The translations under genes and the position numbers were made by a program. Source: Macrostomum lignano (Eukaryota). From it: a stretch of DNA of 64,000 bases. Below, in pieces: positions 12,086-41,977 of this stretch. The number at the start of each line of letters is the position of its first letter. Position 1 is the first letter of the stretch. Below the pieces are notes generated by a model that saw only the letters and a list, made by a program, of their open reading frames with translations, had not been told where the DNA came from and did not search any database. Location of the stretch: the NCBI GenBank assembly GCA_002269645.1, contig NIVC01000947.1:366526-430525 (forward strand). Reading direction: 5' to 3'.

Positions 12086-12371
12086 GATGAGAGTCTAAAT
12101 AGTTAAGAGTGAAGAGACGCGGAGACAGAGACAGACCAGCAAGTAATTGGCGCGCACATGCAGGCAGATACGGTACAAAAGAAGCGCTTCATCTAGTCTC
12201 AGCCTCACCCACCGATTAGAGTGGCGCCAGCACTAACCAAATAAAGGCGATGCAACAAAAACACAGAGATAGTGACTACTAAAAAAGTAAAAAAACCTCA
12301 TCTACACAGACGGCTAGGGCATGAAAGAAAATATCGCCAAGTCAAAAGTCGATCATATCATTGGATAGCTG

Positions 12372-15300
12372 TCAATAAAATCGCTTCTTATTCCTCTGCT
12401 GGCGGGTGTGGTACACCAGGCCCAGCACCAGCAGGGTGACCAGGCCGATGGCGCAGAACAGAACCAGCAGGAAGATGCGCAGGAAGGACCAGCCACTGTC
12501 GGCTTGGGAGTCCACGTGAGCTGCCGAGTTGGGAGACGGGAGGAGCGATGGAGGAGAGGCACTGTGGAATCGTGGGGGGCATTGGGGAATTTGGGGGAGG
12601 CCACTGGGGAATCAGAGGGGGGATTGGGGAATCGGAGGGGGGATTGGGGAATTAGAGGGGATTGGGAATCAGAGAAGGAATTGGGGAATCAGAGGAGGAA
12701 TTGGGGAATCAGAGAGGGCACTGGGGAATCAGAGGGGGATTGGGGAATCAGAGAGGGCACTGGGGAATCAGAGAGGGGATTGGGAATCAGAGAAGGAATT
12801 GGGGAATCAGAGGAGGAATTGGGGAATCAGAGAGGGCACTGGGGAATCAGAGGGGGGATTGGGGAATCAGAGAGGGCACTGGGGAATCAAAGGATGAATT
12901 GGGGAATCAGAGAGGGCACTGGGGAATCAGAGAGGGCACTGGGGAATCAGAGAGGGCCCTGGGGAATCAGAGGGGGCACTGGGGAATCAGAGGGGGGATT
13001 GGGGAATCAGGGGGGCACTGGGGAATCAGAGGAGCCACTGGGGAGGCAGAGTTATCAATTAGCAAGCAGTCACGTGACTCACGCCTTGGAGGCTCGGCGC
13101 TGTCGGCAGAGGGCTCGATGGTCCGGTAGTCCACCCCTATGTTGTCCTCCAAAGGCTCTTTCTGTACAATCGGGGAAGCAGGGGTGAGGGTGTGAAATCT
13201 TGGACTAGCTTAGCACTGCGACTTCGGTGTTCTTCGAAAGCTGAGTTCTATCGATTCTGTGCGATCTCTATTCTGAGAATTCTGAGTTCAAGACACTTTT
13301 TTTCGTGTATTCCTTAATCCCTATTCCCCAAATCCCATATCCCTATTCCCAAACCCCAAATCCCATATCCCTATTACCCAAACCACAAATCCCATATCCC
13401 TATTACCCAAACCACAAATCCCATATCCTTATTACCCAAATCCCATATCCCTATTACCCAAACCACAAATCTTATATCCCTATTCCTTAAATCCCATATA
13501 CCTATTCCCAAAATTCCATACCCCTATTCTCTAAATCTCATATCTCTAAATCTCATATCCCTATTTCCCAAATCCCAAATCTCATATCCCTTTCCCCAAA
13601 CTCCTATTCTTTAATCCCCAAATCCCATATGCCCACATAGCAAATCCCGCCCCAAAATCCCGAACAGGGACATCCCTATTCCCAAAAAATCGCACCCTGT
13701 TCCTGGAACCCTAATCCCTGTTACTAAAGTCGCACATCCTGTTCCCAATTGGCAGACTGGCATGTACCGGTTCAATCTCGTAGACCTTCACAGACAGCAG
13801 GTCGTGATTATCCGACAGGTCGCCAGTCATAGCGCTGACTCCGAACACAAAATGAGTTGGCAATTTCACATTTGGCACTCGAAAGCACGGCTGCCAAATT
13901 TGCTTATTTTCAATATCCGTGGCCACCAATAAAGCGTTGTTGACGTAACGAATGGATAGCAGGGTGTCGTGATCCCGGTTTCTGAAGCGGGCGGTGCAGC
14001 CGTCTAGCTGAGAGTGGGTGCCGTCCCTGTCATGGTCATAGGCCAAGCTGCCATTGTTAACCATAGCCGATATGTATGGATGGTCGTGACTGTGCGGTCC
14101 ATTGTGGTTGCTGTAGGTGTCTAAAAGTACACCGAGGCCGCGGAATTTGTCTTGCATGCCGAACACGGGCCCGTTGAACTTGCTGACGGCCGGGTCAATG
14201 TACCAGAATGCAATGCCGTCGCCAAACAAATTTCCAGAGGAGCCGTGCACTCGGAAGTGCATCTGCACCTCCCAGTGACGCATTCGGACTGGGATTTTGC
14301 ACCATACAGCGCCTCGGTGCGACTGACTGTCCGGAGTTAGGCGAATGAAATCAGATGCAATCACTGTGCTGCCACCGAAGTCCCAGTGGCCTAAAGAGCG
14401 AGTAGAGTGTTGGAGATTCTTTATAGCTGACTGCCTGAGTGCAGAGTGATACCCAATGTCTCAGAGCACTAAAGACCAGCTTGGCAGTGAGTGAGTGCTA
14501 CCCCTTGACTAGATGTCAGTGAGTGAGTGCTACCCCTTGATTAGATGTCAGTGAGTGAGTGCTACCCCTTGATCAGATGTCAGTGAGTGAGTGCTACCCC
14601 TTGATCAGATGTCAGTGAGTGAGTGCTACCCCTTGATCAGATGTCAGTGAGTGAGTGCTACCCCTTGATCAGATGTCAGTGAGTGAGTGCTACCCCTTGA
14701 TCAGATGTCAGTGAGTGAGTGCTACCCCTTGATCAGATGTCAGTGAGTGAGTGCTACCCCTTGATCAGATGTCAGCTACTACTTGATCAGCCTGATAATG
14801 ACAGTGAAAATCATAAACAAAGATAAGCTTTTGCTTAGTTGGTTGGTATCTCATAGTCACTAATTGCTAGTATTTTGATACTGTTTGAGAATAAGAATAA
14901 GTAGTCTCAATAGATTAGGTCAATTTAGAAGTTAAGAAACTTTGTTAATACTTTTTTACTCTATACTACTATCAACATTCAATACATAAACATAACAATA
15001 TACACATGTATATTATATTTATAATTTATAATATCATAGATTTAAAAACAAAATTTATTGCTTGATTTACTTCTTGAGAGAAGTACTTTAGGCCCCCTTA
15101 TCCTATTTAAATACCCTATAAGATATGCTGTTTATCATCTACAAACAGATTATTAACTTTATAACAATCAAACCTTGTTTTGTGCTAGAATTTTACACGA
15201 AAAAGGCCATCTTCCTGACTATGGCCTTCATATGATCCATAGTCTGGATCATGCTAGGTGTACGCCGGAACAAAAATTGAATAATTACAAATACATGCCA

Positions 15301-22386: not shown

Positions 22387-22930
22387 CTGAAGAGCATTCT
22401 CACCTGTCTCCTTGAGCGCAACCATAATGACTGGGACACCTTCCTCCCGGCCTGCCTGATGGCTCTCCGCTCCAGTGTACACACTGTGACAAGATTCACG
22501 CCCAACTATCTGGTGTTTGGCCGTGACTTCCGACTCCCGATCTACAACGCGTTGAAAAAGCTGCCCGAATATGCTGATTTGCCCGGCTATGTCAAGGACT
22601 TCCAGCGCCGTCTGGACGAGGCCACTTAGCTGGCCAAGGATCGTCTGCACCTTCATCAGCAGCTGCGAGACGCGCACTATTCCAACCTGCCGAAGGCCAA
22701 GAAGCTCAAGCCCGGTGATCTGGTCTTTCTCAACAACCCTGTGCTCTAACCAGACGAGGCATCGAAGTTTCATCGACCCCGCAAAGCACTCTACGAAGTC
22801 ATCGAGCCCAGAGGCGAGGTGGTCTACAAAATTCGCCAAAGACTGCCGAATCCACGAGCTAGACGGGATGAACTAGTTGTTCATCGCCGCAACCTGCTCC
22901 ACGTCCCTGATGGTGACTCGCGACCCTGCC
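22387..22930 (+). pseudogene. Gypsy LTR-retrotransposon integrase C-terminal relic
   Basis: Manual translation gives NDWDTFLPACLMALRSSVHTVTRFTPNYLVFGRDFRLP ... KLKPGDLVFL ... LYEVIEPRGEVVYKI ... VVHRRNL, with two in-frame stops. Confidence 0.85.
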
Positions 22931-26244: not shown

Positions 26245-28115
26245 ATGTCCAATCAAGATTCGAACAACAAATCATCGCAACCGACGAGCAAAAGAAGTCG
26301 TAAGGAAGATGGCTTCACCGAGGCGATCGCTGCAATGGACGACATGGTCCTGCAGAATGCATCCGGACCGACTACTCACCTTCAGTTCCCGGACTCCCCG
26401 GATGTCACGGAGGCTGAAAAATACGGTACAGACACGACGCTCGGATCAAGTGCTTCACTAACATGCTGCAGTCAGTGGCTGACGACTGCTACCAACAACT
26501 CATCCAGGATGTCCTGCCTCTAGCTTTTAAGCACCGCCAACATGAGCGCCGCCTGGTCTACTGGTATGGGCCGCAGTACTCTTATTTGGGTGTTCCGCTC
26601 TAGCCTAACAATAACTGGCCCCCTGTAGTAGAAAAAATTAAGCGATTCCTCATCAACAAAGCCAACCTCCCAGCACCAGAATTTAACTCATGCCTAGTTA
26701 ACTTCTACACTACGGCATCAGAAAGGATCCCTTCACGCCGACAATGAACCCGAGATTGGCCAGCGTCCCTACATCACCACAGTCTCCTTTCTCCTTGGGC
26801 GCGATCAGGTCTTTCTGGATCAAAATTTAGGACCACACCAGGCTCTGTAATCCTCATGTCTGGATCTACGCAGCAGCACTGCCAGTACTCTGTGCCAGAA
26901 TGCAGGAAGCAAGAAGGTGTACGAGTCTCACTCACCCTCCGTGTCACTAGCGAAGCGAACAATGGTCCTACGTCCATGGCTGTTGACGACAACGACGAGG
27001 CGGCTGCGGCGGCGAAGGCGACGGCACGGCGACGACAGCGTTCCGGAACAGCGTTGGCGTGGCAACAGCAGCGGCAGCGACTCCAGGCGGTGACTTCCGG
27101 TCATACGCGAGCGTGACCATAGCACCTCGTCCTCCTCCAACTAGGCAAACCTCCGAAGCCACACCAGTCTTTGAAGTAGACGCTGACGCGGCTGGTGACC
27201 AGCTGAAGTTTCTGGAGTGGCTGGCAGCAAACTTCCAAGGTTCCATCCAAACTAATCCAAACTAACCATCCAAACTAAGCCCTTGGCTAACGGCACCGGC
27301 TTTGTGTTGACACCGGTCACGACTCGAAATCACGAGATTTTGCTACACGGTGAACTAAGAGTGCCGTTGCTAGGCGACGAACTAGTCACCAGGCCGCTCC
27401 CAGGGCCAGGCCACTTCTTAACAACAGCGTCAGTGCTGACCAACAGACTAAGGTCAACCAAGTACAGCAAGGAAAAAGATCCCATGTGACCTTTGTCATC
27501 CGCGACGTCCCGACCAACATTCAGGAGGCCGGATTCCTGCAGATGCTCAAAGGCGACCTCGGGCTCAACATCGAGAGCGTCTGAAGAATCAGATAAAAAA
27601 ACACTGGGTATTCGACCCAAATGCTTAGTGCCTTCACCAATGACGAGTCCCTTCCCTGGCGGCACGGTGCGTTGCTGACGGCATCTCAACGGACTTCTGC
27701 CACTACCCTTGCGAGGTGAGCCGCACGATGACACCAGTGAGAGAGTAGCAATGCCAGCGATGCCAGGCCTTTGGACACTCGGCACGAGTATGCGAGGGGG
27801 GCATTGCCTGCCGGATCTGTTCTGAACTCACCACTGGAAAGACTGCCCCAGACCGGAGGAGCCGCATTGCGTCAACTTTGGAGAGGCCTACAGAACCACC
27901 AGCCACGCCAACAAAATGCGCGACTCCGCCACCAGACAAGCCGCTGCCGTGAGGCTGCGGAGACGGAGCTCGAACGCCAACGCCAACAAACTGCCGACTC
28001 AGCGCTACCGCCGCCGCCGCTGCCACCGCCAGTCTCAGCTCCTACCCAGAGCGCACTTCCGGCCGACAACCAGACCCGGTCCAACATCCTGCAATTGACA
28101 TTCAAGTACTGGTAA
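26245..28115 (+). pseudogene. LINE ORF1 (gag-like: RRM-like region plus three CCHC knuckles) with an N-terminal AlkB/2OG-Fe(II) dioxygenase domain; frameshifted
   Basis: AlkB motifs RRLVYWYGPQYSYLG, FNSCLVNFY, H-A-D (26734-42), GSVILMSGSTQQHCQYSVP and RVSLTLR (26922-42). Then SYASVT linker, FVIRDVPTNI, and QCQRCQAFGHSARVC / CRICSE.HHWKDC / HCVNFG knuckles (~27750-27910). Confidence 0.8.
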
Positions 28116-29399
28116 GTGGGCTGGTGCCTGCAACAGTTCAATTGGTGATTGAGATGGTCACCAGGACTCTGGCTGGGTCAGCGTCGGGTCCATTTGCCTC
28201 AGCCGATGCCTGTCAAACGGTGTCGGATGTGGTAAACCCGCATCTGGCAGAGGTTATACGCGTTTATCCCCGGGGCCTTTGAGTTTGTGTTCTCACTTTT
28301 TTAAGATAGATGTCTAGCGGTCTAAGGTTTGTACAGCTCTAATTTCTCCAATCAGGCCGTCAGAGAAAACCGTATAAACCGACGGGATCTCCTAGTATCT
28401 AAGCTGAGTTTGAGTCTCTCTAGGATTTGCTCTGCGCGGCAATTAAGACAAATGATTATATTGAAGACTTAGATTTGTGCCGACTGGATAATCCAGAGAC
28501 CAATTCAAAGGGAGCAATTTGAGATCGAAAACTGCGCAAGAAAACGAAGCGCCGTTCCAGTTTGAGATGACGTCTATTTATACCAATTCGCATTTTTGAC
28601 CTCCCCATCGCCGCCGGTGGGGTGTCTTCGCGTGGTTAGCAACGGCGGGGTTTTTTAAGCAATAAAAATCTAGGACTCAGTTCCCTAGCTGTACATGAAT
28701 TTGGTTAGTTCTAGTAGGTTGCTAAGCGTGAGGGTTAGAGATTATTCGGGGTTTGCAAATCTATGTGTTAAGTTGGATAAAATTTGGGATAGAAAGATTA
28801 TAGAAAAATAGCTTAATTTTCCGTCTCTTAACTCTGTCCATTGAAGATTAAACAGTCCTCTGTTTCTCTCGGTTGTCAGGCAGCTTGGGGGTTGATCTCG
28901 CCTTCTTGGGCCACTTCAGGTTGGATAGGAGTCTCTAGGTGGGCCTCACGTTTTCTCCCTCAGGGTGCGCCAGAAGACGCCGCGTGCCGCGTTGTTCTCT
29001 AAGCTGGGCCGCTTCTCCCAGCCAGTTTAATCGCCATTATTCCTGCGGCGGGGTGTCGCTACTGACTGGAATGGAAAGGGACTTAATTAGATTCGGCTAT
29101 TCAAATTGATTGACAGCTGATTAATTATCTTAGAGCTGCTTCTGTTGGCTGTTCTCATAAGTGTTCTCACAGGCTCTATTGTGCTTTCCTGCCTCGCCCT
29201 TCACTGCGCCTGGACTTTTCATAAATTTCTATCTATCTTCTAACTTAAGGTAAAGTTCAGATTTCTAACTCTTATAGAGGTGATCGGCCGGGGTCTGGGT
29301 GGCCATCCTGCCCCGCTACCCAGGGAAAGTTGGCCGGCAGAGCGTCTGTCCGGCCAACCAGGTACCTAGAAATAAATGCGGAAACTACAATTCAATTGT

Positions 29400-31945
29400 G
29401 AAAAATAAAGTATCAAAATAGCGCACCTTAACTGCAGAGGGATCAAACCCAAAGTGAAAGAACTTAGATTTTGGCTCCGAACTAATAAAATAGGCACAGC
29501 CCTGTTCTCTGAAACAGTCCTCAGCTCCCCCGACCATGCTCATTTCCTGGTTACGGAACTGTTCATTTCGATACCCAGGACACAAAGAAAGGCCTCCTTG
29601 TCCACTCACCAAAGGTCCAAATCACAAACTATGCTCTGACCTACGACAAACACTCACTGGTCTACAGAAATTCTTCACTGGACCAGCTTGACACCAACCT
29701 CCTCTCCAGACTCCTTTCAGACAAACATAGCCTCCTGCTGGGGGACCTAAATGCTAGGCATGGGTTCCTTTGAAGTGAGAGTAGCTGTAACAGAGCAGGG
29801 AAGCAACTCCACGAGCAGGCAGCAAACAATAAAATCAACCCAGTCATCTATAGGAACGTTCTAGACTTGGGCATTTCGACAACTGACTTCAGCCCCTGGA
29901 TAAGCAAGTTCTACATCGGAGATGATGTGGGCAGTGACCATCTTCCCATCTTCGTCACCCTTAACTCCACACCCCCACCAGTCTGGTCAGGACCGGAAAA
30001 ACCAAAAAAACTTCAACAAAGTAGATTGGGACACCTTTCAAGCCCACTTAAGAGAAAACATGCTTCACAAAAAAGAAGACACAAGATCCCCTCTGGACTC
30101 TAAAATTGACCAGGAAGCCAAAACCATCACAGAAGTCATCCAAAAGACTATTGAAGAGGTTTTTCCAACCAGAAACCTTCAAAGACCTCTCCCTCCAGAT
30201 CTCCAACCAGACAAGAGATGACTCCTTCAGAAGGAAAGCCATCCAGATTGCCAAAGTAATTAGAAGAAAAATAGATGCTTTTAGGCTAGAAAACTTACCA
30301 AAATGTGAGAGAATAGTCGAAAACAGTAACAACAAAAAATCAAGGACTGCTGGAGAGACACTAAAGTTCTCATGGGCAAAAACAAAACAGGAACCATTCC
30401 TTCGCTTTCCACGGAAAGGAAACTGCTCACACTGACATTGACAAAGCAAACCTCATTGCAACCACTCTACAATAGGATTCATCCCATTTCATCCACCAGC
30501 ATTTTCTTTAAAGAAGAGGTTGAAAATGTGTGCAAACGAACCGAGTTCAAGCCCATCCCACAAGGCAGCTGTCAAGATAACGCATCCACTGGAGATCCCC
30601 TTTACTGCCTCTGACACAATCTGGGAGCTCGAACATCTTATTGTAAACAGCGCCCCTGGACTTGTCAAAATCTCCAACAAAGTCCTCGAATTTGGCCTTG
30701 AAGGCGTTGCGATCAACCGAATCACCAACCTATTCAACTCCTGCTTCAAAACAGGCATCTTTCCCACGACATGGAAGCAGGCGGTGGTCACAATGATCCC
30801 CAAACCTAACAAACGCTTGCAATCACCTAGCTCTTATAGACCAATTAGCCTACATCCTGCTTAGAAAAAGTCTTTGAAAAACTCCTGTTGAGAAGACTTA
30901 TGAAACACTTAGAAGCAAACAACACATTGGGTAGTGATCAGTGTGCTTACCGCAAGGTCCATTCTACACTTGATAATCTAGTTTGGCTCGTCCAGGATGC
31001 CCTGGTCGCTGAGGCAGAACACTTGAGATGCCTAGACATCTTCTTCGACGTGGAAGGCGCCTTTGACACAATCGTCCACGACTATCTCAGATACAAAATA
31101 TTCCAAGTCGATCTGCCAACAGCCATCACCCGGATTTGCTCCAACTACCTTGAAAACAGGAGTATGCAAGTTAAGGTCAACAGCGTCCTCAGTGACTTGT
31201 ATCAATTCATGGCAGGTGTCAGCACAATGCCCAAACGGGTCACCCAAATACATAAAGAAGTCAATTCGATGATGACATGGCCATCTGGGGCTTCGCCAAA
31301 TCTTTTGGGGAACTCCGAAATCAAATACAACCGTACCTGAACAGCATTTGGGCCTAGTTCGGAGAACAGGGTGTTAAAATCGATGCAAACAAAAGTCAAG
31401 CCACAGTCTTTAACTATGCCCCAGCAAACCCGGATAGAAGGGATATCAGACCCGAATTAAAACTAGGTGATGCAACTCTGACCTATCAAAAATAAGTAAA
31501 TTTCCTTGGCATCAATCTCGACTACAGACTCACTCTTAAAGCACCATGACCTATCCCTAATCTAGGTGCCCCAATCTAAGTACTCAAAAATGACAACATT
31601 ACAAAACTCCAACAAACGCAAAACCTTGCCGTCAAAATATGCTATGGCGCCCTAAGCTACACACAAATCAAATTCTTTATGAGCTAGCCGAAATGCCGAC
31701 AGGATCGTGGACCTGGGCGTAGGCTGGCTCAAAAGGCACAAAATGCCAATGCACAGGAATGTGAGAACGAACCAAACTTACCCAGAGCAGCTCAAAGAAA
31801 TCACCCGATCCTTAACAAGCTCTAGTGCAAACAAAGAGAGCTGGCCGCTTCTATGCTTCTGATCCCATCGAGATTAACAAATAAGGCAAAAAGAACCCTA
31901 AACAGCGATGCAGAAAAAAACCATCAAACAAAAAAACTTGCCGAA
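29400..31945 (+). pseudogene. Decayed I/Jockey-group LINE ORF2 (APE endonuclease plus RT) with A-rich tail
   Basis: IKIAHLNCRGI..ET; LLLGDLNARH; DDVGSDHLPI; WKQAVVTMIPKPNK..SSYRPISL; QCAYRKVHST; FFDVEGAFDTIVH. Many frameshifts. Confidence 0.85.
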
Positions 31946-32164
31946 GATAGTCGGACTGGCTCCCAAGCTAAATTCACATATCGTGAATTGACTGCGCAGG
32001 CGCCACACTGTGGATAACCTATCTTGCAGTGTCACTCAGGGTACGCGGACAATATCTTTTACCCATCAGCGACTGTATTAGGACTGTATTACTGTGCTAA
32101 ATCAGTAACATAATACTATCATTCCAGGTATTGGAAGCAGTCTGTAACACAATTTTGTACTTCA

Positions 32165-32603
32165 TGGAAGTTCCTGTGGCCATCCTGTCGACAGTGAGTA
32201 AGCGAGGGAAAAGGAAGCTGGCCTGTGAGGGCTATTATTACACCCTTGATAAGGTCAGTGTCGCTGATAAATCTGTAAGCTTTTGGGATTGCGAAGAAGG
32301 GCGGCACCATTCCTGCCCAGAGCGAATCCACATTCAGAATGGCATGCGGATTAAACAGCTGCATCATCATACTCATGGACCAGATGGTTCCAGGTATTTG
32401 GCCCTTAGCTGTGGGAAATATGAGAAGGGAGGCTGCGGATACACAAAATTCGACAGCAAATATCCTTGCAAATCATGGAGGCAACTTTCCTGATGCCGCT
32501 GTAGTTGCTTTACCGAAGCAAACGGTGCAAAACGTTGCCTCCAAAAGTTGTCCAAAACGTGCCCATTCAGCCACAAAGCCGCGTAGAACTGGTTCGAATC
32601 CAT
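32165..32603 (+). pseudogene. FLYWCH zinc-finger / MULE transposase N-terminal fragment
   Basis: SKRGKRKLACEGYYY..SFWDC....SCPERIH......HHHTHGPD, then a frameshift into a MULE-like helical segment. Confidence 0.7.
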
Positions 32604-32958
32604 AAAATTTTTGGCTTTAATTTGAAGTACTTTACTTACTACTGACGGGGGGCGCAGGCGCCGCGAATAGGCCGCGAGGCCCCTATCGCAACCTCAAGGT
32701 ATTTGAAGTAATTTTTAAAAGTTTTACTGTCTACTTGCACGAATCTGTGTCTTGATTTTTTTTCATGGCTCTGAAGTGCCTTCTGTTAGTTTAAGAAGAT
32801 TAAGAAGTAGAAGTTTGTGGATAGGAGACCATTAACCCTGCTTGATAAGAGAATAATCCTGTGGATTTCATTTCCAAAACAGACTGCTGATGGCACGACG
32901 CCAGGCGATGAGACTGCAGGCGAAGGAGGCGAGCAGCAGCAGCAGCAATCCGACACCC

Positions 32959-33048
32959 GGGGGACAAGAAGGCACCCTCCGAGCGAACACCATGGGGTCC
33001 CCGGACGCCCCGCGTCGCGCAACAGGACCGAGGCGACTAATGGCCTTC
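32959..33048 (+). ncRNA. HDV-like self-cleaving ribozyme at the 5' end of element A (enlarged L3)
   Basis: P1 GGGGAC/GTCCCC; P2 GAAGGC-A/T-g-GCCTTC; P3 CCC/GGG; L3 begins TCC and is 16 nt; P1.1 GG; P4 CGCC/GGCG; J4/2 CTAA (C33037). Confidence 0.65.
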
Positions 33049-36000
33049 ACAATCAGCGATGCTCCATATGGAGCGAGAGAGCCAATACTGCGTGCATGGA
33101 GACCGAACCTCAGCAACAACAACAACAAGGGCAACAGATCTCGACCGACGCCCCCCATGCTGAGAGCCTACCTACTGAACAAGTCCTGCGACTGCGAGGC
33201 GGTTGCGACCATCCTGACCGCCGACCCAAGCACGGCCGCCGGAGGAATACCGCGGAGTCGGGCCCAGAGCTCATCCTACAGTTCAACTGTAACGGCGTCA
33301 AGAGCCGTCATACTGAGCTGGCTAAATGGCTCCACGTCAATCGTCCGGCTGCGGTCCTACTGCAGGAAACGAAGCTTGCCAGAGACACAGATTACATCCC
33401 TCCTACCGGATACTACGTCGCCGCGCGCTGCGACGGTCTTCCTAAAGAGGCCGCCGGCACCCGGGCCACCGAGAACAAGGAAGGGGGGCACCTCTCCAGC
33501 CCACCCAACCCAGTGGCCCCGAAGCTAACCCTAACGAAGGGGCCAGCGCGGACAACTGCCCCACGCCATGGGCAAACTGCGGCCGCAAGATTAAGCGCCC
33601 ACGTTGCCGCATCCGCTGGCCGGCTGACAAGAATGATAAGGCGGAGTGGTGCCGCGGCTGCCGCTCAGGCAGAACCGCCTGCACCCGCAGAGACGAGCCG
33701 TGGCCACAACCACCGCAACCGCAGCCACAGGCCCAGACCCAGAGTGCGCAACACAATCGCGCCGACCGACAACCAACAGGAGCAGGCACGGAGGACCGCC
33801 GCCTCGAAGCCGCCAATAACTCGGCCCAAGAACAGGACGAACAAAGCGACCCACACCAGAGGAGGCACCCTGATCCTAGTGCGCGCCGACATTGCGTCCG
33901 ACACTACGCCATCGCCGCCGGACAACGAACGCCAACTGCTAGACTGCGCCACCGCCACCATCCACCTCAAAGGCCAGGAGCCGATCACGCTGGTTTCCCT
34001 CTACGCACCACCGACCAGCAACCAACGGGGGGAAACCTGGCAACCCCCGCTTCATCTGGTCCCGAACGCCACTGGCCCCACCGTCGTCGCCGGCGACTTC
34101 AACGCCCACGGCAGTTGGGACCGGCACCAAGACGAAGATGAGCGCGGCAAAATAGTGGAAGCCTGGGCGACCTCCCGCAACCTGAGACTTGCAAACGGCG
34201 ACTACCATACGCGAACTAACCCAGCAACAGGAGGCAAATCTACTCCGGACCTTACCTGGACCAGCAACAACCTCCTGCAAGGCATCGCGGAGGGCTGGAC
34301 GACCCTCGACGATCTGGGGTCCGACCATCTGCCCATCTCCTTCCCGGTCCAGAGACACCCCAGAGCGCCACGGAAGGGCAAGAACCTGCCACGGGCCACG
34401 TGGTGCTTCCGCAAAGCGGACTGGGGGAGCTTTAAGGACGAACTCACTAAGATCGACGGCCAAAGGGCTGACTACCCAACTCACGGCGTCCAACTCGCAC
34501 ATCTTCACGCCATCATCTGTAACGACATTCTAACGGCCGCTGCCCATAACATACCCAAAGGGGCCAGAACTGCTGCGAAACCATTCTGGACTGACGCCTG
34601 CGCCCAAGCCACCCGGGAGTGCAAAGAAGCCCGGCACGTCGCCGAGCTGTCCCCGAGCGACGACAACCTGGCTAGGTTCAAAGCGGCCCGTAACAACTCC
34701 AGAAAGGTGATCCGCCAGGAGAAACGCCGCGCCTGGAGCGAGAAGGCAGCTGAGCTCACCATCAACAGCGACCTTTTCCGCACTCTGCGCCAGATGCGTG
34801 GCGATGGCCCCAAACCAAATAGCGGCGCCTCCCTCCAGAGAAAGAAGACGGGGCAGCAAGAACCATCTCGGCCGGCCCGCACCAACCTGGAGAAGGCCAA
34901 CCTGTTCTGTCAGCAATACGCCGCTGTCTCTAGAGTTAAAGGAGGCCCCCAAGACGCCCACACCAATCAAGCCGCGAGAGCAGCCCTCAACTCCAGCTGC
35001 ACGTGCAATGGCTCACGCACCGACATGTGCTCCGCCTTCAGCCTGACCGAATACCGCAGCGCTGTGCGCTCGCTCAAATCCGGGAAGGCACCAGGCCCGG
35101 ACGGAGTTACCAACGACATGCTTAAAAGACTCCCACCGACCACGGACCTGAGGCTCCTGGACCTCATCAACCGGTCTTGGAAGGAAGGAGACTGCCCGAT
35201 GCAATGGAAGAAATCGGTCATCATACCTATCCCCAAGAAAGGGAAAGACCCTAGTAACCCGGAGTCCTACCGCCCAGTGGCACTCACCAGCAGCATCGCC
35301 AAACTGGCCGAACGGATGGTGCTCCAACGCCTGCGCTTTGCCCTCGAGAATTCTGGCCGCCTCAGCAGTACCCAGGCCGGCTTCCGCCGCGGCCGCTCTA
35401 CTGAGGAACTCATCGCGAGCACCTGCCAGGACATCTTTGACGGTCTGGAGGCGGTCCCACACCTGCGGTCAGTGCTGTGCCTTCTCGACTTTAGTCGTGC
35501 TTACGACCGGGTCTGGAGGGCTGGGCTGATCGCCAAGCTGAAAAAGCTCGGCATCCCTAACGACGTGCTCCGCTGGATCCGGAGCTTCCTTGCCGACCGA
35601 CGTGCCCGCGTACGAGTCGGCAACTGCCTGAGCAATGAAAGAATCTTCAAGGAAGGCCTCCCCCAGGGCAGCGTGCTGGCTCCCCTGCTCTGGGTCGTCT
35701 ACATCAACGACCTGGACACGGAGATTAAAGAGGCCCATACGGACTGCAAACTGAAGCTCTACGCAGACGACAGCGCCCTCCTGGCCACCGACCGGAGTCT
35801 CGACGCCTGCGCTGCGAAGCTCCAACCTGCCCTGGACGCTGTGCACAAATGGTGTCAGACGTGGAAAGTGGAGCTGAGCGCTGCGAAATGCGTCTACGGA
35901 ACTTTCACCCTGGACCCCAAGGAAACCAACGGAAAGAAGAAGGTCAGCCTCACCATCGGTGGCCAACCGCTGGCCCATGACCCAGCGCCACGCTACCTGG

Positions 36001-37583
36001 GAGTGCGCCTCGACGACCAGCTCGCATTCAACAAACAGGGGGCCGACGTCCGCGCTCGTATGTGCGCTCGGCGCCGTCCGCTTGCGGCGCTAGCCAACCG
36101 CAGCACCGGAGCCGACCACCATACGCTGAGAGCCGCCTACGTCAGCACTGTCAGGGCTGTCGCCGACTACGCCGCGGGCACCTGGCTCTGCGGGGCAGCC
36201 CCCTCAACAAGGCACTCCATCGAGCGTCAACAGGCTGCCTGTGCCAGGATCATCACAGGCTGCATCCTTCCTTCGGACACGCGAAGCGTTCTCCGTCTTG
36301 CCGAGCTCCCACCGGTCAGCCACGTCGCCTCCGAAAGAGCCGCCCGCCTCCGGGAAAGGATCCTGAGATTGGGCCCAGGCGCAGCAGCACACGAACCTGC
36401 TACCAGGAGCACGCGCCCGAGGCTGAAGAACCGCACCTACGAGGCTGGGCAGAGGAGACCAACGACAACGGACGCCCAAATTGACACGCCCCACATCGAC
36501 CTCAGAGACACTAGGCGCCCTTTCCGCAACTGCTGGCGCCGAGCGGCACTAGAGATGCCAGCCAGCGTCGATCTCGACCAGTACATCAGAGACGACATAT
36601 GTAGTCCCGGTATCGCTCCCTGGGAGGCACACACGGACAGAATCCGGTTCTGTCTGGAGGCAGCCTCGAGGTGCAGCAAATCGGACCCGTCCGCCGACCG
36701 GAACGCAGCCGCCCGCGACACCCTGGAGGACCTACCTGAAGCAGACATCAACATTTGGACGGACGGCTCCGTTGCCGACGGCACAGGGCCAGGAGGCAGC
36801 GCCGCCATCATCGGTACTAACCTGGTGACCTTCGTCCGGAAGAGCCCAGCTGGCCGCTTCTGCAGCTCATTCGACGCTGAGATGCGCGCTATCAAAGACG
36901 CCCTCACCTTTGTCGCGGAGAAGATCGCCCCTCGCGCAGCCCGCATCCGGCTGTGCAGCGACTCGCTATCGTCGCTCACGGCCCTGCAAGCGGGCCCCCT
37001 AGATCAGCGCACCGAGAGTGGCCTCTCCTGCTGGCGTTTCCTCATCAGCCTGGGCACCTGCGACCTCAATGATATTGACCTCGCCTGGGTCCCTGCCCAC
37101 TGCGGCATACCCGCTAACGAAGCGCGGACAGAGCTGCGAACGCCGCAGCCCGCTTGCCGCAAACCACGGCTGCCATTTCGCTGGGCGCTGCCAAGGCTGC
37201 CATCCGCCGTGACCGCCGTGCGCTGGACGACAGCGCTATGCCCCGGCCTGGCCAACCTTCCACGCTAGAAGCCGGACCGAGCACACGGCGGTCTGCCAAC
37301 TCCGAGCCGGTGCCTCAATGCTCGCCGCCGAGGTCCGACACCGTTTCGGCCTGACGGACTCCCCGCTCTGCCAGGACTGCGGGGCACCGGACTCGAGCCT
37401 GCACGCGATCTACAGCTGCCCGAGGGGGGACGCGCACCGCACTCGCCTGGTCGGCACTGAAGTGGAGCGCCTCCTTACCGAACCGGGCTTGGCCCTCTCG
37501 CTCCTCCGGAACATGGGGCGTTGGCCCCCGTCTATTTCGGCGCCGCCGCGCCGCTGACGAGCGCATGAGAAGAAAGAAAAAGA
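32959..37583 (+). mobile_element. Ingi-like (I-group) non-LTR retrotransposon A: single ORF APE-RT-RNase H-CCHC, near-intact (two frameshifts near the C-terminus)
   Basis: LQFNCNG, LQETKL, VAGDFNAH, LGSDHLPI; LPQGSVL, YADD (35760); RNase H WTDGS..AEMRAI..SDSLS..WVPAHCGIPANE; CQDC..H...C. GAA-rich tail; flanked by 12-bp TSD AATCCGACACCC. Confidence 0.92.
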
Positions 37584-37595
37584 AATCCGACACCC

Positions 37596-37673
37596 GGGGG
37601 CTTGGAGACGACGTCCACGACGTGCCCCTGGACCGACCGAGAAATCGCGTCGGAGTACCGACTAACGGTCTCC
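37596..37673 (+). ncRNA. HDV-like self-cleaving ribozyme at the 5' end of element B
   Basis: P1 GGGGGC/GCCCCT with G1-U wobble; P2 GGAGAC-G/C-g-GTCTCC; P3 ACG/CGT; L3 TCCACGA; P1.1 GG; P4 CCGAC/GTCGG with a GAAA loop; J4/2 CTAA (C37662). Confidence 0.8.
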
Positions 37674-40600
37674 CCTACCACCGAACCTGCGAAGAGATGC
37701 ACACGGTGCTCAGGCTGCGAGGCGGCGACTCCACCATCGCCCCAGCCAACCACCGCAAGACACGCCGTACACGCCGTAGCGCCCGGAAACGTCGAGACGG
37801 ACGGCCCAGCGCAGAGCCGGATCAAGAGCTCCGAGCGCTTCAGTTCAACGCCAACGGACTGAAAGCACGCCTCACAGAGCTGACCCATTGGCTCGCCAAG
37901 AACCGCCCGGCCCTCGTCCTCATCCAGGAGACAAAGCTCGTGCCCGACGAGGAGTTCACCCCACCAACCGACTACTGCATCGCAGCGCGAGTCGACGGAC
38001 TCCCCTACAACGAGGAAACGGAGAGCGCTCGAGACGACAACACGGACACCAACAATGCCGGCACCCAACAACAGCAACAGCAACGACCTGTGGCCCGCAC
38101 CGCGACCAGGCGAGTGACGAGACCACGGTGCCGCCTCCGTTTCCCAGACGATCGGGCCAGATGGTGCCGCGGATGCCGCAGTGGACGTACCGCCTGTACC
38201 GAACGCGACGCCCCGTGGCCAGGCACAGATGCAGGCCCCGAGCAAACCGAGGCCGGAGAACGAGAGGAGACGGGCGCGCCACTAGCCGGGAGAAAACCAA
38301 AAAGGCAAAAAAAATCAACCGGCAGGGGCGGCGTCCTGATCATGACTCGCTCGGACGTGAGGTACAGCACACTACCCACGATCCCACAGGACCAAGGCAA
38401 ACTCGATGCGGCCGCCATCATCCTTCACATCACTGGCAAGTCCCCCATCACCGTCGTTAATATCTACGCCCCGCCAACCAGCGCCCAGCGCCAGGACACT
38501 TGGGCTCCGAACTTCGACACCCTGCCCGTGGGCCCCAACTCCATCATCTGTGGCGATTTCAACGGCCACGGCTGCTGGGACAGGTGGACGATGAAGACGC
38601 TAGGGGACACCTCATCGAACACTGGAGCGCGACTAACGGCCTCCACGTCTGTAACGGAACCAGCCACACCAGGAGCAGCCCGAGCAGCGGATCCCGGAGC
38701 TCACCCGATCTGACGCTGGCAAAGGGATTCCTGACCGCGATCATCCCGGCGGGTTGGAGGACCGAAAAGGATATGGGCAGCGACCATCTCCCCATCACCT
38801 TCCCGCTGGCAATGGCAAGGCGCGAACTCAAGCACGGTATCACTCGCTGGAGCTTCGCCAAGGCCGACTGGCCCGCCTTCAGACAACATCTAGCCGACAT
38901 CCAAGGACCCCAGGACTGGGGTGACGTGGACCCTGAACACGCGGCCCTCTGCGCCGACATCATCGAGGCCGCCACTCAGGCGATCCCCAGAGGCAGCCCC
39001 AAAAACAACCGCTGCCCTTTCTGGACCCCAGACTGCGAAATCAGCCGGCAAGCCTGCATCAGAGCAAGGGCGACGGCCGAGTCCGACCCGACCCCAGAAA
39101 ACCTCGCGGCCTACAACGCAGCTCGACATACCGCCAGCAATACCATCCGCAAAGAGCGCAGAGGCTTCCTGGAAGACCGCGCCAGCGAAATGACGGTTGA
39201 TAGCAACCTCTTCCGGCTCCTGCGCGCAGCCAGAGGAGATACGCCAGTCCCGCGCGGCAAAGTCGACATCACCCGGAAGTCGGCCGACGGCGTCGAGCTC
39301 CGACCGGCGCGCACCGACAAAGAAAAGGCAGACACTTTCTGCCAAATCTACGCCGCTGCCGCCAGGGTCCCCCGCCGACAGGAGGACTACAAGATCCGCT
39401 ACGAGGCAAGACGCGCCAGGAGACGACCAGCCCAGCCGCCGGTACCCTTCACTCTCCTGGAGCTCAGATCAGCTATCCGACAACTCAAATCCGGCAAAAG
39501 CGCCGGAGATGACGGCGTTACGAACGAGATGCTCAAACGCCTCCCACCGGCCACCGACCAACGCCTCCTGGACCTCATCAACCGCACGTGGATACAACAG
39601 CGCTGCCCCAGAAGCTGGAGGTCGGCAATCATCATCCCAATTGCCAAAAAAGGAAAAGACGCTACCCTCCCAACATCCTACCGACCGGTGGCCCTTACGA
39701 GCTGCATCGCCAAATGTGCGGAGAGGATGGTGCTCCAAAGACTCAACCGCCAGCTCGAAACCAACGGCTCCCTGTCCCCGGCACAAGCCGGATTTCGCAG
39801 AGGCCGCAGCACCGAGGAGCAGCTCGCCAGGGTCTGTCAGGACATCTTCGACGGCCTGGAACGCTCTCCACCGCACAGGAGCATCCTCGCGTGCATGGAC
39901 TTCAAAGGAGCCTACGAAACGGTCTGGAAGGAAGGCCTCGTTGTGAAGATGACTCGAGTAAAGATTGACCAGAACATCATCGGCTGGACGGAAGCCTTCC
40001 TTTCCGACCGACGCGCAAGAGTCCGCTTCGGGCGCACCCTGAGCTGCCAGCGCGTCTTCCGAGAGGGACTCCCACAAGGCTCGGTCCTGGCGCCAACTCT
40101 CTGGAACATCTACGTGAATGACCTAGAGAAGGCAGTCACGACAGCAGCGCCGGACTGCGGCATCAGCCTCTACGCCGATGATTCGGCTGTCCTCAGCACC
40201 CAGCCCTCACTGGCGGGCTGCGGAGCCAGGATACAACCGGCACTCGACGCTATAGCCAACTGGACCAAAGAGTGGAAAATCACCCTGAGTACCAGCAAGT
40301 GCAACTACTCAACATTCACGCTCGCCCCCAACGAGGTGAATGGCAAGCTCCGGGTCCCGCTCGAGCTAGCCGGCGAGCCACTCCAGTTTGAAGAACACCC
40401 GACCTTCCTGGGCCTCATCCTGGACTGCCAGCTGAACTTCGCCAAGCACGCAGCCAACGTCTGCCGCCGCATGAGCCGACGCCGACGCGCTCTCGCCGAC
40501 CTCGCGAACCGCGCGGTAGGAGCCACCCAGGAGGTGCTCCGGACGGCCTACCAGGCAACCATCCGCGCCGTGGCCGAATACGGATGCGGAGTCTGGGGAG

Positions 40601-41977
40601 CCAGCGCGGCACCGAGTACCAAACTGCTTATCGAACAGCAACAGAACAGCTGCGCAAGAATCATCACCGGATGCATGCTCCCAACTCGAACCACGGAGCT
40701 GCTTCGGACGGCCAACCTCCCCCCCTTTGGCCACACCATCCTGGAACGCGCCGCCTGCCTCCGAGAACGGGTGCTGCGCCTCCCGGAGGACGTCCCAGCA
40801 CACCGGACTGCGGCCAGAGACACCACCAGCAGACTACGAAACCGCGCCTACGAGAGCGCCCGCCGACAAGAAGAGGCAATTTTTAACGCGCTACTAGACA
40901 ACGACTACAAGCGCCCTTTCCGCGGCTGCTGGCGGCGAATCGCGAGAGAAATCACCGGCCCCTGCGGCCTCGAAGACCGGCCCAGAGAGCCGTTCCCGCC
41001 ACCGCCGCCCGATCTGGCACACCTCGCGCTCAACCGGTACAGCCAGACTTTCGACCTCACCCTCGCCGACGGCTGCGGCAGAGCAGTCCCGACGAGCGTC
41101 CGCCGCGACAGGGCGATGTCAGCTCTCGAGCAGCTGACACCCTGTGACATCGACGCGTGGACGGACGGCAGCGTCAAGGAGGGCATCCACGACGCATGGG
41201 GCGCCGCGGTGGTCTGCACCCGCCTCTGGTGTCAAAAGATCACCGCCCCGGCTGGCCGGATCGCATGCAGCTTCCAGGCGGAGATGGTCGCGATCAGCGC
41301 CGCCCTCGACTACATTACTCAACTCCCGCCAGAGCACGGCCTTACAGTGCGGATCCTCAGCGACTCCAAATCAGCACTCACGGCCCTCCAGAGCGGCCCC
41401 AGTAGGCAGGTCACCGCCGCCGGAAGCCGCTGCTGGGAGGTACTGGCCCACATGTCGCGCCCGTGCGAATTCGTCTGGGTTCCGGCCCACTGCGACGTCC
41501 CGGGCAACGAGCAAGCAGACCGCTGCGCCAACGAAGCTAGACGCGGCCAACAGCAGGACGAACCCATTACGCTGCAGGCCGCCAAGGCCGCCATCCGACG
41601 CGCGCGGTCCGCCCAAGACCAGGAACTGCTTGGACGCCCCTGGCAACGACCACCACGACACCTGACCAGGAAAGAAACGGTGGCGATTAACCAACTCAGA
41701 GCCGGGTGCTCCACCCTGGCCGGGGCCACACGTCACCGGGTCGGCCTGACTGAGAACGCCAGCTGTCCCGACTGCGGGGCGCCCGACACGGAGGAGCATA
41801 TCATCCTTGAATGCCCACGCGGCGACGCCCTTCGGGCGAGCACTGAGGACGAGAGGGACATCCGCGACGACCCGGAGCGCCTTCTCGCCCTCCTTCGCAG
41901 GTTGGGGCGCCTCTGAGCGCCCTCCCCCCAGCTGCCAGCGGCAGCGTTGTGGGGCGGTGGAAGAAAAGAAGAAGAAG
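37596..41977 (+). mobile_element. Ingi-like non-LTR retrotransposon B: APE-RT-RNase H-CCHC, one frameshift (~38580), stop at 41916
   Basis: LQFNANG, IQETKL, ICGDFNGH, MGSDHLPI; LPQGSVL, YADD (40171); WTDGS..AEMVAI..SDSKS..WVPAHCDVPGNE; CPDC..H...C. (GAA)n tail; same 12-bp TSD. Confidence 0.92.

What the first reader, a model, noticed from the sequence alone, without database searches (positions are those of the whole stretch)
26245..28115. LINE ORF1 fused to an AlkB-family (ALKBH2/3-like) dioxygenase
Seen, after manual frameshift repair: PRL-like RRLVYWYG..YSY, W..V...I, FNSCLVNFY, HxD (HADNEPEIG), GSVILMSGSTQQ, and RxxLTxR. The distal Fe ligand His appears as Tyr (TAC at 26886, one transition from CAC). 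This runs collinearly into a gag-type ORF1 with an RRM-like segment and three CCHC knuckles, upstream of an APE-RT ORF2. Established: AlkB domains repair m1A/m3C in ssRNA/ssDNA and occur in replicases of some plant RNA viruses. Known LINE ORF1 accessory domains are mostly PHD, esterase, RRM and CCHC. Inference: a retroelement that repairs or demethylates its own RNA (m1A and m3C block RT) or erases host silencing marks. This copy is dead.
Basis: partly seen in the sequence, partly recalled or inferred. Interest (0 to 1): 0.85.

Follow-up and report, generated by a model that had tools for sequence, protein, structure and literature searches.

The report
Dead LINE whose ORF1 carries AlkB
This is a decayed copy of an animal LINE retrotransposon whose RNA-binding first protein carries a built-in ALKBH3-like demethylase; intact relatives exist in the flatworm Macrostomum lignano and other assemblies, and I found no published report of it.

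Summary
After frameshift repair, window 26245-26950 encodes an AlkB domain (Pfam PF13532, 52 bits, cutoff 31.2). It runs collinearly into a gag-like ORF1 with two RRM-like segments and three CCHC knuckles that ends at 28282, not 28115. The fusion is not a chance juxtaposition. The repaired ORF1 aligns in single 500-residue matches with intact fused proteins of 757-962 aa. In four other loci such an ORF1 lies directly upstream of an APE or APE+RT ORF2; the RT is seen in two. The closest relatives are from Macrostomum lignano. In nine fused relatives the Fe(II) ligands (HxD...H) and 2-oxoglutarate arginines are invariant. Their AlkB domain is at least as conserved as the RRM and CCHC domains. 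By sequence and predicted fold it is closest to human ALKBH3, then ALKBH2. The window copy is dead: at least 12 frameshifts or stops, plus the distal His changed to Tyr. Its decayed ORF2 (29376-31900) belongs to the same LINE clade, but an unexplained 1.1 kb spacer separates it from ORF1. The likely function, untested, is oxidative removal of m1A/m3C from the element's own RNA or cDNA. Related AlkB ORFs also precede Penelope-like RT/GIY-YIG genes. No prior report was found.

The parts
26245..26433 (+). ORF1 start (ATG 26245) and N-terminal region. It has a basic KRSRK stretch and an FPDSPDV motif shared with M. lignano P0160 (FPDEPDL).
26418..26948 (+). AlkB (ALKBH2/3-type Fe(II)/2OG dioxygenase) domain, broken. 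Lesions: frameshift ~26443, TAG stop at 26601, frameshifts ~26733 and ~26806, a short deletion after TVSF, and the distal His changed to Tyr (TAC 26886-26888). HxD is at 26734-26742 and RVSLTLR at 26922-26942.
26949..27150 (+). Low-complexity Ala/Arg/Gln linker between AlkB and the gag-like part, with a frameshift ~27055. It corresponds to the disordered linker in intact relatives.
27160..27400 (+). First RRM-like segment (PVFEVDADAAGDQLKFLEWLAANFQ...GFVLTPV...). Frameshifts at ~27251-27260 (inside a 3-copy 13-nt tandem repeat, TRF array 27243-27278) and ~27395.
27480..27700 (+). Second RRM-like segment (HVTFVIRDVP...RIR.KNTGYSTQMLSAFTNDES). Stops at 27582 and 27594, frameshift ~27651-27663.
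27746..27918 (+). Three CCHC zinc knuckles. Knuckle 1 (27752-27793) is intact and preceded by a TAG stop at 27746. Knuckle 2 (27809-27846) is split by a frameshift at ~27827. Knuckle 3 (27868-27918) is degenerate.
27919..28282 (+). ORF1 C-terminal tail with several further frameshifts, a predicted helical end (LVPATVQLVIEMVTRTL...) and a TGA stop at 28280-28282.
28283..29375 (+). Unexplained 1.1 kb spacer between ORF1 and ORF2. Intact relatives have 0-62 nt here, or about 35 nt in M. lignano. It may be an insertion. A 10-nt direct repeat (28287 and 29161) is no better than chance.
29376..31900 (+). Decayed ORF2. APE runs from ~29376 to ~30000 and RT from ~30650 to ~31540, followed by a C-terminal region to ~31820. 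It is 44-50% identical to the ORF2 of the M. lignano AlkB-LINE and 46% to that of L008, against ~25% for the neighbouring GC-rich LINEs.
31880..31945 (+). A-rich stretch, the probable 3' end of the element. The boundary was not proven and no target-site duplication was identified.

Best explanation
Window ~26245-31945 is an old, inactivated copy of an APE-type non-LTR retrotransposon (LINE). Its ORF1 protein has this order: N-terminal AlkB dioxygenase domain (ALKBH3/ALKBH2-like), disordered linker, two RRM-fold domains, three CCHC knuckles, helical tail. In other words it is a type-I (RRM+CCHC) ORF1 with an added enzymatic head. ORF2 encodes APE and RT and has no RNase H. The architecture, its recurrence in intact elements and the conservation of the catalytic residues are shown. 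The mechanism is inferred. ORF1p coats the element's own RNA in cis, which would tether a Fe(II)/2-oxoglutarate demethylase to the RNP. Like ALKBH3 and the AlkB domains of plant RNA viruses, it would then oxidatively remove N1-methyladenine and N3-methylcytosine, which block reverse transcriptases. The substrate would be the template RNA and/or the single-stranded DNA and cDNA exposed during target-primed reverse transcription, and the effect would be more full-length copying. I put ~0.95 on the architecture and family assignment and ~0.5 on this specific mechanism. The stated confidence is for the whole.
For: The AlkB domain scores 52 bits on Pfam PF13532. An exhaustive HMMER search places long proteins, not stand-alone AlkBs, at the top, and these are AlkB fused to RRM and 3x CCHC. 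The window ORF1 aligns in single HSPs of ~500 aa with P0014, P0126 and P0013 across both parts (E ~1e-50). A frameshift-aware alignment to P0160 and P0014 is collinear from 26349 to ~28100. An APE ORF2 follows the fused ORF1 in L003, L007, L008 and L012, and an RT is also seen in L008 and L012. H140, D142, H198, R210, R216, N128 and Y130 are invariant in nine fused proteins. AlkB identity of 40-45% is at least that of RRM/CCHC (28-40%) and well above the linkers (12-16%). The best PDB sequence hits are ALKBH3 (87 bits) and ALKBH2 (65 bits). By fold, ALKBH3 has TM 0.78-0.85, well ahead of E. coli AlkB, FTO, ALKBH5 and ALKBH1. The window ORF2 is closest to ORF2s of AlkB-LINEs. The same GC gradient (gag > AlkB > ORF2) appears in the window and in three intact elements. 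From established knowledge, ALKBH3 repairs m1A/m3C in ssDNA and RNA, m1A and m3C stall RT, and LINE ORF1p binds its own RNA in cis.
Against: No enzymatic or retrotransposition data exist for any member. The window copy cannot be active (His to Tyr plus 12 or more disruptions). A 1.1 kb spacer separates ORF1 from ORF2 here, unlike in intact relatives. There is no other copy in the window and no other DNA from the source genome, so element ends and target-site duplications are undefined. Monophyly of all LINE-borne AlkBs is unresolved (NJ bootstrap 10%). Only the window + P0001 + M. lignano group is supported (92%). Substrate preference (RNA or DNA; m1A/m3C or m6A) cannot be read from sequence.
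Confidence: 0.8

Rival explanations
1. Chance juxtaposition: a processed pseudogene of a host ALKBH2/3 gene happens to lie just upstream of a 5'-truncated LINE ORF1.
For: No second copy exists in the window. The AlkB part has a lower GC content than the gag part.
Against: Intact proteins from other assemblies have the same AlkB-linker-RRM-CCHC order and align collinearly with the window. The homology starts upstream of the AlkB core, in the N-terminal FPDSPD motif. The same GC step is seen in intact elements.
Confidence: 0.02
2. ORF1 (26245-28282) and ORF2 (29376-31900) in the window are pieces of two different, related elements, or of one element interrupted by an insertion, rather than one contiguous copy.
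For: The 1.1 kb spacer compares with 0-62 nt in L003, L007 and L008 and about 35 nt in L012.
Against: ORF2 belongs to the same clade as ORF2s of AlkB-LINEs and not to the neighbouring GC-rich LINEs. The two parts share strand and order, have similar decay, and show the family-typical GC gradient. No convincing target-site duplication or inverted repeat bounds the spacer.
Confidence: 0.2
3. The AlkB domain is an epitranscriptomic counter-defence. It would erase a host-imposed regulatory mark (m6A or regulatory m1A) from LINE RNA rather than repair damage, as proposed for the orchid Ty3/Gypsy AlkB.
For: The orchid Gypsy-encoded AlkB demethylates m6A in vitro (PMC9289625). m6A writers and erasers modulate human L1 (PMC7873242).
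Against: The domain is closest to ALKBH3/ALKBH2 and is far from the m6A erasers FTO and ALKBH5 in both sequence and fold.
Confidence: 0.2
4. The domain acts on DNA: on the nicked target, on first-strand cDNA, or on 6mA/alkylated genomic DNA at insertion sites, rather than on RNA.
For: ALKBH3 and ALKBH2 are DNA repair enzymes. The best structural matches are ssDNA- and dsDNA-bound complexes. CCHC/RRM ORF1 proteins also chaperone cDNA (PMC4120745 discussion).
Against: Nothing here argues directly against it. ORF1p is primarily RNA-bound (established knowledge), and the viral analogues act on RNA.
Confidence: 0.2
5. The AlkB module is a non-catalytic nucleic-acid-binding passenger, or the fused proteins are domesticated host genes.
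For: UniProt lists them as ordinary 'Fe2OG dioxygenase domain-containing' proteins.
Against: All metal and 2OG ligands are invariant across members only 30-45% identical. An APE ORF2, with RT where the contig extends that far, follows in every locus examined. M. lignano holds multiple copies, including two on one 18 kb stretch.
Confidence: 0.04

Closest known systems
Human ALKBH3, then ALKBH2 (Fe(II)/2-oxoglutarate nucleic-acid demethylases)
   Same: The double-stranded beta-helix fold is the same. So are the HxD...H iron triad, RxNLTFR, the NxxxNxY 2OG-binding motif and the PRxxxWYG lid motif. Identity is 30-32%, TM 0.78-0.85, and phmmer gives 87 bits for ALKBH3 and 65 bits for ALKBH2.
   Different: The domain is not a stand-alone repair enzyme. 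It is the N-terminal domain of a retrotransposon ORF1 protein. It has a shorter loop after the WxG motif, and Leu/Cys/Phe replaces the Trp two residues before the distal His. Activity is untested.
Type I LINE ORF1 proteins (RRM + CCHC; Jockey, I, R1 and some L2/CR1 lineages; Khazina & Weichenrieder; Metcalfe & Casane, PMC4120745)
   Same: There are two RRM-fold domains followed by three gag-like CCHC knuckles (type IB layout), and ORF2 with APE+RT follows.
   Different: An extra ~220-aa AlkB domain and a disordered linker sit at the N-terminus, where subtype IC has a PHD finger. AlkB is not among the ORF1 domains catalogued in that survey of 448 elements, which lists RRM, CCHC, PHD, esterase, coiled coil and Tnp22.
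AlkB ORF of Phalaenopsis Ty3/Gypsy LTR retrotransposons (PMC9289625)
   Same: It is a retrotransposon-encoded AlkB-family dioxygenase, proposed to act on the element's own RNA.
   Different: That is an LTR element in plants with a separate ORF carrying a C-terminal domain. The authors describe it as close to m6A demethylases and show it to be active on m6A. Here the element is an animal non-LTR, the domain is fused N-terminally to ORF1p, and it is ALKBH3-like. I made no direct sequence comparison.
AlkB domains in replicases of plant RNA viruses (flexiviruses, closteroviruses, ampeloviruses)
   Same: An AlkB domain is embedded in the replication protein of a selfish RNA-templated replicator. 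These viral domains were shown by others to repair m1A/m3C in RNA (own knowledge: van den Born et al. 2008). The fold is shared.
   Different: They are much more distant (13-25% identity in the fold alignments). They belong to RdRp-based viruses, not reverse-transcribing elements, and lie inside a replicase polyprotein rather than a gag-like RNA chaperone.
Esterase (SGNH/GDSL) ORF1 of CR1/L2 LINEs (PMC3905857)
   Same: It is another case of an enzymatic domain in a LINE ORF1. One AlkB ORF (P0128) also has a weak GDSL-like C-terminus.
   Different: The chemistry is different. In P0128 the GDSL match is below the Pfam cutoff, and that element is Penelope-like rather than a LINE.

Membership tests
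AlkB family (Pfam 2OG-FeII_Oxy_2), ALKBH2/3 clade | Profile match above the curated threshold | tested here: met
   The window's repaired translation scores 52 bits against a cutoff of 31.2. Intact relatives score 70-110 bits.
AlkB family (Pfam 2OG-FeII_Oxy_2), ALKBH2/3 clade | Fe(II) triad HxD...H | tested here: not met
   In the window copy HAD is present (26734-26742) but the distal His is Tyr (26886-26888), so this copy is catalytically dead. In all nine intact fused relatives the triad is invariant.
AlkB family (Pfam 2OG-FeII_Oxy_2), ALKBH2/3 clade | 2-oxoglutarate-binding RxxxxxR and NxY | tested here: met
   The window has RVSLTLR and NSCLVNFY. Both motifs are invariant in relatives.
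AlkB family (Pfam 2OG-FeII_Oxy_2), ALKBH2/3 clade | Double-stranded beta-helix fold closest to ALKBH3/2 | tested here: met
   This was tested on a relative (P0014), not on the window copy. In the AF2 model the AlkB domain has 10-residue block means of mostly 65-91, with a dip to ~50 at residues 131-150 that include the HxD ligands. Foldseek gives TM 0.78-0.85 to ALKBH3, and ALKBH2 is next.
AlkB family (Pfam 2OG-FeII_Oxy_2), ALKBH2/3 clade | Oxidative demethylase activity and substrate range | not testable with these tools
   This needs biochemistry.
APE-type non-LTR retrotransposon (LINE) | ORF2 with APE endonuclease and reverse transcriptase downstream of ORF1 | tested here: met
   Window: RVT_1 scores 34 bits on one piece, and APE/RT show homology to L008, L007 and L012 ORF2. 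Relatives: Exo_endo_phos_2 plus RVT_1.
APE-type non-LTR retrotransposon (LINE) | Type I ORF1: RRM(s) immediately upstream of CCHC knuckles | tested here: met
   Relatives have three CCHC by pattern and two beta-alpha-beta-beta-alpha-beta domains in the AF2 model. The window copy is collinear but degenerate. Pfam gives no RRM or zf-CCHC call on the window copy.
APE-type non-LTR retrotransposon (LINE) | Multiple dispersed copies, 3' A-rich tail, target-site duplications | tested here: inconclusive
   M. lignano has several copies. The window has one copy only, with an A-rich stretch at 31880-31945 and no target-site duplication found.
Jockey clade / Jockey superfamily | RT phylogeny placing the element in the clade | not tested
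   No reference RT set was available. Only indirect evidence exists: ORF2 lacks RNase H in L008 and L012, and ORF1 is of type IB layout.
Penelope-like elements (for the related AlkB ORFs P0012 and P0128, not the window) | RT followed by a C-terminal GIY-YIG endonuclease | tested here: met
   In L010, RVT_1 scores 32 bits and GIY-YIG 23.3 bits, both above cutoff, and the contig ends overlap. The L011 ORF is 42% identical to the L010 RT and carries GIY-YIG at a sub-threshold score.

The most novel reading that the evidence does not exclude
A lineage of animal retroelements has recruited an ALKBH3-like demethylase into the protein that packages its RNA. The lineage includes APE-type LINEs in flatworms and, independently or by module exchange, Penelope-like elements. 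The enzyme would be active and would clear RT-blocking base methylation (damage, or a host-imposed mark) from the template or cDNA. That would make it a third, convergent case beside plant RNA viruses and orchid Gypsy elements. It would imply that nucleobase methylation is a general barrier to selfish RNA-templated replication.
Probability: 0.45. Interest if true: 0.85.

Novelty: new variant of a known kind. Interest (0 to 1): 0.72.

Why it matters
The catalogued LINE ORF1 domains are nucleic-acid-binding or chaperone modules (RRM, CCHC, coiled coil, PHD) plus one esterase. A nucleic-acid repair or demethylation enzyme fused to ORF1p would be a new functional class for non-LTR elements. It gives a directly testable handle on an open question: do m1A, m3C or m6A on retrotransposon RNA limit reverse transcription in vivo, and do elements fight back? 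Intact, apparently young copies exist in Macrostomum lignano, a transgenic-tractable flatworm, so the domain can be expressed and mutated. The finding also shows that proteins annotated as 'Fe2OG dioxygenase domain-containing' in flatworm proteomes are transposon ORF1s, which matters for gene counts of AlkB homologues. The parallel occurrence in Penelope-like elements suggests either module exchange between retroelement classes or repeated capture.

Tried and rejected
- The word-index protein search with the repaired AlkB found only P0001.
- With P0001 as query it found only bacterial stand-alone AlkBs.
- With the whole repaired ORF1 it returned nothing. The query has long Ala-, Gln- and Pro-rich runs, and I suspect these filled the 8000-candidate list; that search was wasted.
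- P0001 and the 1483-aa neighbouring LINE ORF are not in the contig index, so the source genome could not be identified directly.
- Self-comparison of the window found no second copy.
- A search for a target-site duplication or inverted repeat around the 1.1 kb spacer gave only chance-level repeats.
- dN/dS between P0013 and P0163 was impossible because their DNA differs by 1 nt. I used per-domain identity instead.
- An NJ bootstrap tree did not resolve whether all retroelement AlkBs are monophyletic.
- Rfam found nothing in the window.
- A literature look-up of the SRA and IMG accessions gave no organism.
- I considered and rejected the idea that the AlkB-ORF1 belongs to the adjacent GC-rich RNase H-containing LINE at 32817. 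That ORF2 is only ~25% identical to ORF2s of AlkB-LINEs and is intact, whereas ORF1 is heavily decayed.
Full report
**1. Observation**

With frames joined at the obvious breaks, the 283-aa product matches Pfam 2OG-FeII_Oxy_2 at 52 bits (E 1.4e-13, gathering cutoff 31.2). A single uninterrupted frame piece (26460-26732) already gives 23 bits. The Tyr at the distal iron-ligand position is TAC at 26886-26888.

The same strand continues downstream. After an Ala/Arg/Gln-rich linker come GDFRSYASV, PVFEVDADAAGDQLKFLEWLAANFQ, HVTFVIRDVP, then CQRCQAFGHSARVC and two further, damaged knuckles. Pfam itself does not call RRM or zf-CCHC on this decayed part.

**2. Is the fusion real?**

There is no second copy in the window, so the test had to come from elsewhere. 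An exhaustive HMMER search of 1.84 billion representatives was run with a profile of P0001 plus exact window pieces. It gave 6108 hits, and the best after P0001 were long proteins rather than 200-aa stand-alone AlkBs.

- P0013 (962 aa), P0014 (757 aa) and P0126 (843 aa) have an AlkB domain with intact HxD...H and RxNLTFR. This is followed by a linker, a conserved ...FxV/I...VP... core and three canonical CCHC knuckles.
- P0088/P0165 keep only one matching knuckle and lack part of the second RRM-like segment in the alignment. P0160 shows one knuckle because its gene model is frameshifted.
- The repaired window ORF1 aligns in single BLASTP HSPs of ~500 residues with P0014 (query 75-559 to subject 43-550, E 3e-50), P0126 and P0013. 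Each HSP spans both the AlkB and gag parts.
- A frameshift-aware DNA-protein alignment is collinear with M. lignano P0160 and with P0014 from 26349 to about 28100.

Chance juxtaposition with a host pseudogene is therefore excluded.

**3. Are these LINEs?**

In every locus retrieved, an ORF2 follows the fused ORF1.

| Locus | Source | ORF1 | ORF2 |
|---|---|---|---|
| L003 | Logan SRR31628434 | AlkB-ORF1 (P0014) | APE starts 1-2 nt after the ORF1 stop |
| L007 | Logan SRR31628403 | AlkB-ORF1 (P0013) | APE starts 1-2 nt after the ORF1 stop |
| L008 | 9 kb contig | 1752-4283 | 4346-7556, Exo_endo_phos_2 + RVT_1, no RNase H |
| L012 | M. lignano NIVC01003829.1 | 6233-8649 | 8685-11543, plus a second partial copy upstream |

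Cluster look-up names P0010, P0011, P0053, P0059 and P0088 and their cluster mates as Macrostomum lignano proteins. P0001, the closest relative of the window AlkB (55-70% identity), has a UniParc number lying among the numbers of the M. lignano entries.

A neighbour-joining bootstrap groups window + P0001 + the M. lignano P0010 group at 92%. The window also shares a ~1 kb repeat at 73% nucleotide identity with the M. lignano contig. From this I infer that the window comes from Macrostomum or a close relative. This is an inference, not a demonstration.

**4. The window's ORF2**

The decayed APE-RT at 29376-31900 is 44-50% identical to the M. lignano AlkB-LINE ORF2 and 46% to that of L008 in the RT core. 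The two GC-rich, RNase H-bearing LINEs further downstream are only ~25% identical. The GC step gag > AlkB > ORF2 seen in the window (0.58/0.51/0.45) recurs in L012, L008 and L007.

ORF1 and ORF2 therefore most likely belong to one element. However, 1093 nt separate them here, against 0-62 nt in L003, L007 and L008 and about 35 nt in L012. I could not explain that spacer.

**5. State of this copy**

The guided alignments give these lesions:

- AlkB part: frameshift ~26443, TAG at 26601, frameshifts ~26733 and ~26806, a short deletion in the beta-strand after TVSF, and His to Tyr at 26886.
- Linker and first RRM-like segment: frameshifts ~27055, ~27251-27260 (within a 13-nt tandem repeat) and ~27395.
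- Second RRM-like segment: stops at 27582 and 27594, frameshift ~27651-27663.
- Knuckle region: stop at 27746, frameshift ~27827, and several more after 27880. In the third knuckle Cys is replaced by Phe and His by Tyr.

ORF2 is similarly fragmented. The copy is dead.

**6. What kind of AlkB?**

The AlkB domain of P0014 hits human ALKBH3 best among all PDB sequences (E 1e-23, 87 bits), then ALKBH2 (65 bits). E. coli AlkB is not found at E < 1e-3.

An AlphaFold2 model of P0014, built from a 9-sequence alignment, has these regions:

| Residues | Region | Confidence |
|---|---|---|
| 1-218 | AlkB domain | 10-residue block means mostly 65-91, dipping to ~50 at 131-150 |
| 219-309 | disordered linker | below 50 |
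| 314-383 | beta-alpha-beta-beta-alpha-beta (RRM topology) domain | 10-residue block means 65-83 |
| 414-489 | second domain of the same topology | 10-residue block means 57-84 |
| 491-556 | knuckle region | lower |
| 693-737 | C-terminal helices | lower |

Foldseek ranks ALKBH3 first (TM 0.78-0.85, 31% identity) and ALKBH2 next. E. coli AlkB, FTO, ALKBH5 and ALKBH1 lie seven orders of magnitude behind in E-value. Viral AlkBs, from giant viruses and plant RNA virus replicases, are more distant. The RRM assignment rests on topology only, because the top 50 rows shown by the fold search were all AlkB-family structures.

**7. Is the domain under constraint?**

Nine fused proteins that are only 28-58% identical overall keep a long list of residues invariant. 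In P0014 numbering these are W95, N123, S124, L126, N128, Y130, H140, D142, D143, E144, G159, R162, G183, S184, Q193, H198, R210, L213, T214, F215 and R216. The list includes the full metal- and 2OG-binding set.

Between divergent members, the AlkB domain is 40-45% identical, the RRM and CCHC domains 28-40%, and the linkers 12-16%. A passenger domain would not behave like this. dN/dS could not be computed because the only close pair differs by 1 nt.

**8. Mechanism (inferred)**

Three pieces of established knowledge apply. LINE ORF1 proteins bind the encoding RNA in cis and chaperone RNA and cDNA; PMC4120745 summarises this for RRM/CCHC types. ALKBH3 removes 1-methyladenine and 3-methylcytosine from ssDNA and RNA. 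Those lesions disrupt the Watson-Crick face and stall reverse transcriptases.

An AlkB head on ORF1p would therefore be tethered to the template. It could clear RT-blocking methylation before or during target-primed reverse transcription. There are three alternatives:

- erasing a regulatory mark such as m6A, as in the orchid Gypsy precedent (PMC9289625);
- acting on the exposed target or cDNA strand;
- acting on host RNAs.

The ALKBH3-like affinity argues mildly for m1A/m3C and for single-stranded substrates. Only biochemistry can decide.

**9. Comparison with known systems and novelty**

The gag part has the type IB layout (two RRMs plus three CCHC). The AlkB sits where subtype IC elements carry a PHD finger. 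Enzymatic ORF1 domains were previously limited to the CR1/L2 esterase (PMC3905857). Retroelement or virus AlkBs are known in an orchid Ty3/Gypsy lineage (PMC9289625) and in plant RNA viruses.

Eight full-text searches combining AlkB or 2OG terms with non-LTR, ORF1, LINE, Penelope-like, Repbase, transposable element or Macrostomum found no report of an AlkB domain in a non-LTR or Penelope-like element. The library is incomplete, and Repbase notes and subscription journals are not covered.

I therefore rate this as a new variant of a known kind: a LINE with a new ORF1 accessory enzyme, and a third class of replicator carrying AlkB.

**10. Extension noticed: Penelope-like elements**

Two further top hits are AlkB ORFs that lie directly upstream of an RT + GIY-YIG gene, the hallmark of Penelope-like elements.

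- P0012 lies in L011.
- P0128 lies in L010 and has a weak GDSL-like C-terminus.
- The L010 RT is 42% identical to the L011 RT-GIY-YIG ORF.
- The L010 contig ends overlap, so the GIY-YIG fragment at its start is the end of the same gene.

AlkB-bearing first ORFs thus occur in two retroelement classes.

**11. Verdict**

The locus itself is a fossil, but it points to a real and apparently undescribed family with intact members.

Noticed in passing
L010 2851-5502 and 5478-7148 (JGI 3300055003); L011 3134-4843 and 4951-7083 (SRR19193851): AlkB-containing ORFs (P0128, P0012) lie directly upstream of RT + GIY-YIG genes, the hallmark of Penelope-like elements. P0128 also has a weak GDSL-esterase-like C-terminus. 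The L010 contig ends overlap (7022-7148 = 125-251).
   Followed up: partly
window 28283-29375: A 1.1 kb non-coding spacer lies between the ORF1 stop and the ORF2 start. Intact relatives have 0-62 nt here (about 35 nt in L012). No repeat, target-site duplication or homologue was found, so its origin is unknown.
   Followed up: partly
window 32817-37268 and 37565-41916: Two GC-rich (61-67%) LINEs lie head to tail, each with APE, RT and RNase H. The first has an intact 1483-aa ORF. They are only ~25% identical to the AlkB-LINE ORF2 and so belong to a different clade, and no ORF1 was seen upstream of either.
   Followed up: partly
window 32131-32490 (+): A FLYWCH zinc-finger ORF (Pfam PF04500, 43 bits) lies between the two LINE types. 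It may be a host exon or part of another mobile element.
   Followed up: no
window 13714-14364 (-): A single 217-aa ORF matches the legume-like lectin family (ERGIC-53/VIP36 type) at 258 bits. It is probably a host gene exon.
   Followed up: no
window 679-13630: This region is dense with minisatellite arrays (periods 15-56 nt, up to ~79 copies). Examples are 679-1456, 3590-4393, 7241-7971, 8887-9698 and 10436-12087. They account for the extreme GC skew at 9-12 kb and for the long Pfam-negative ORFs on the minus strand.
   Followed up: partly
window 44943-45943 vs L012 13783-14839: About 1.1 kb of 73% nucleotide identity with a M. lignano contig, plus repeated 130-nt pieces at 77%. This is a shared repeat family and suggests the window comes from Macrostomum or a close relative.
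   Followed up: no
window 60556-61287 (+): N-terminal part of a PIF1-like helicase (70 bits), possibly Helitron-derived.
   Followed up: no
window 22459-22629 (+): A short ORF contains ...RFTPNYLVFGRDFRLPI..., which resembles the C-terminal part of an LTR-retrotransposon integrase. The resemblance is from memory only; this ORF was not submitted to any search.
   Followed up: no
window 52976-53436: A perfect 69-nt tandem repeat (6.7 copies, 100% identity) lies inside an ORF with a weak STPR-repeat match.
   Followed up: no
L012, L008, L007 and window 26245-31900: All AlkB-LINEs examined show the same internal GC gradient. The gag part is 6-8 points richer than the AlkB part, and the AlkB part is 4-15 points richer than ORF2. 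The cause is unknown.
   Followed up: partly
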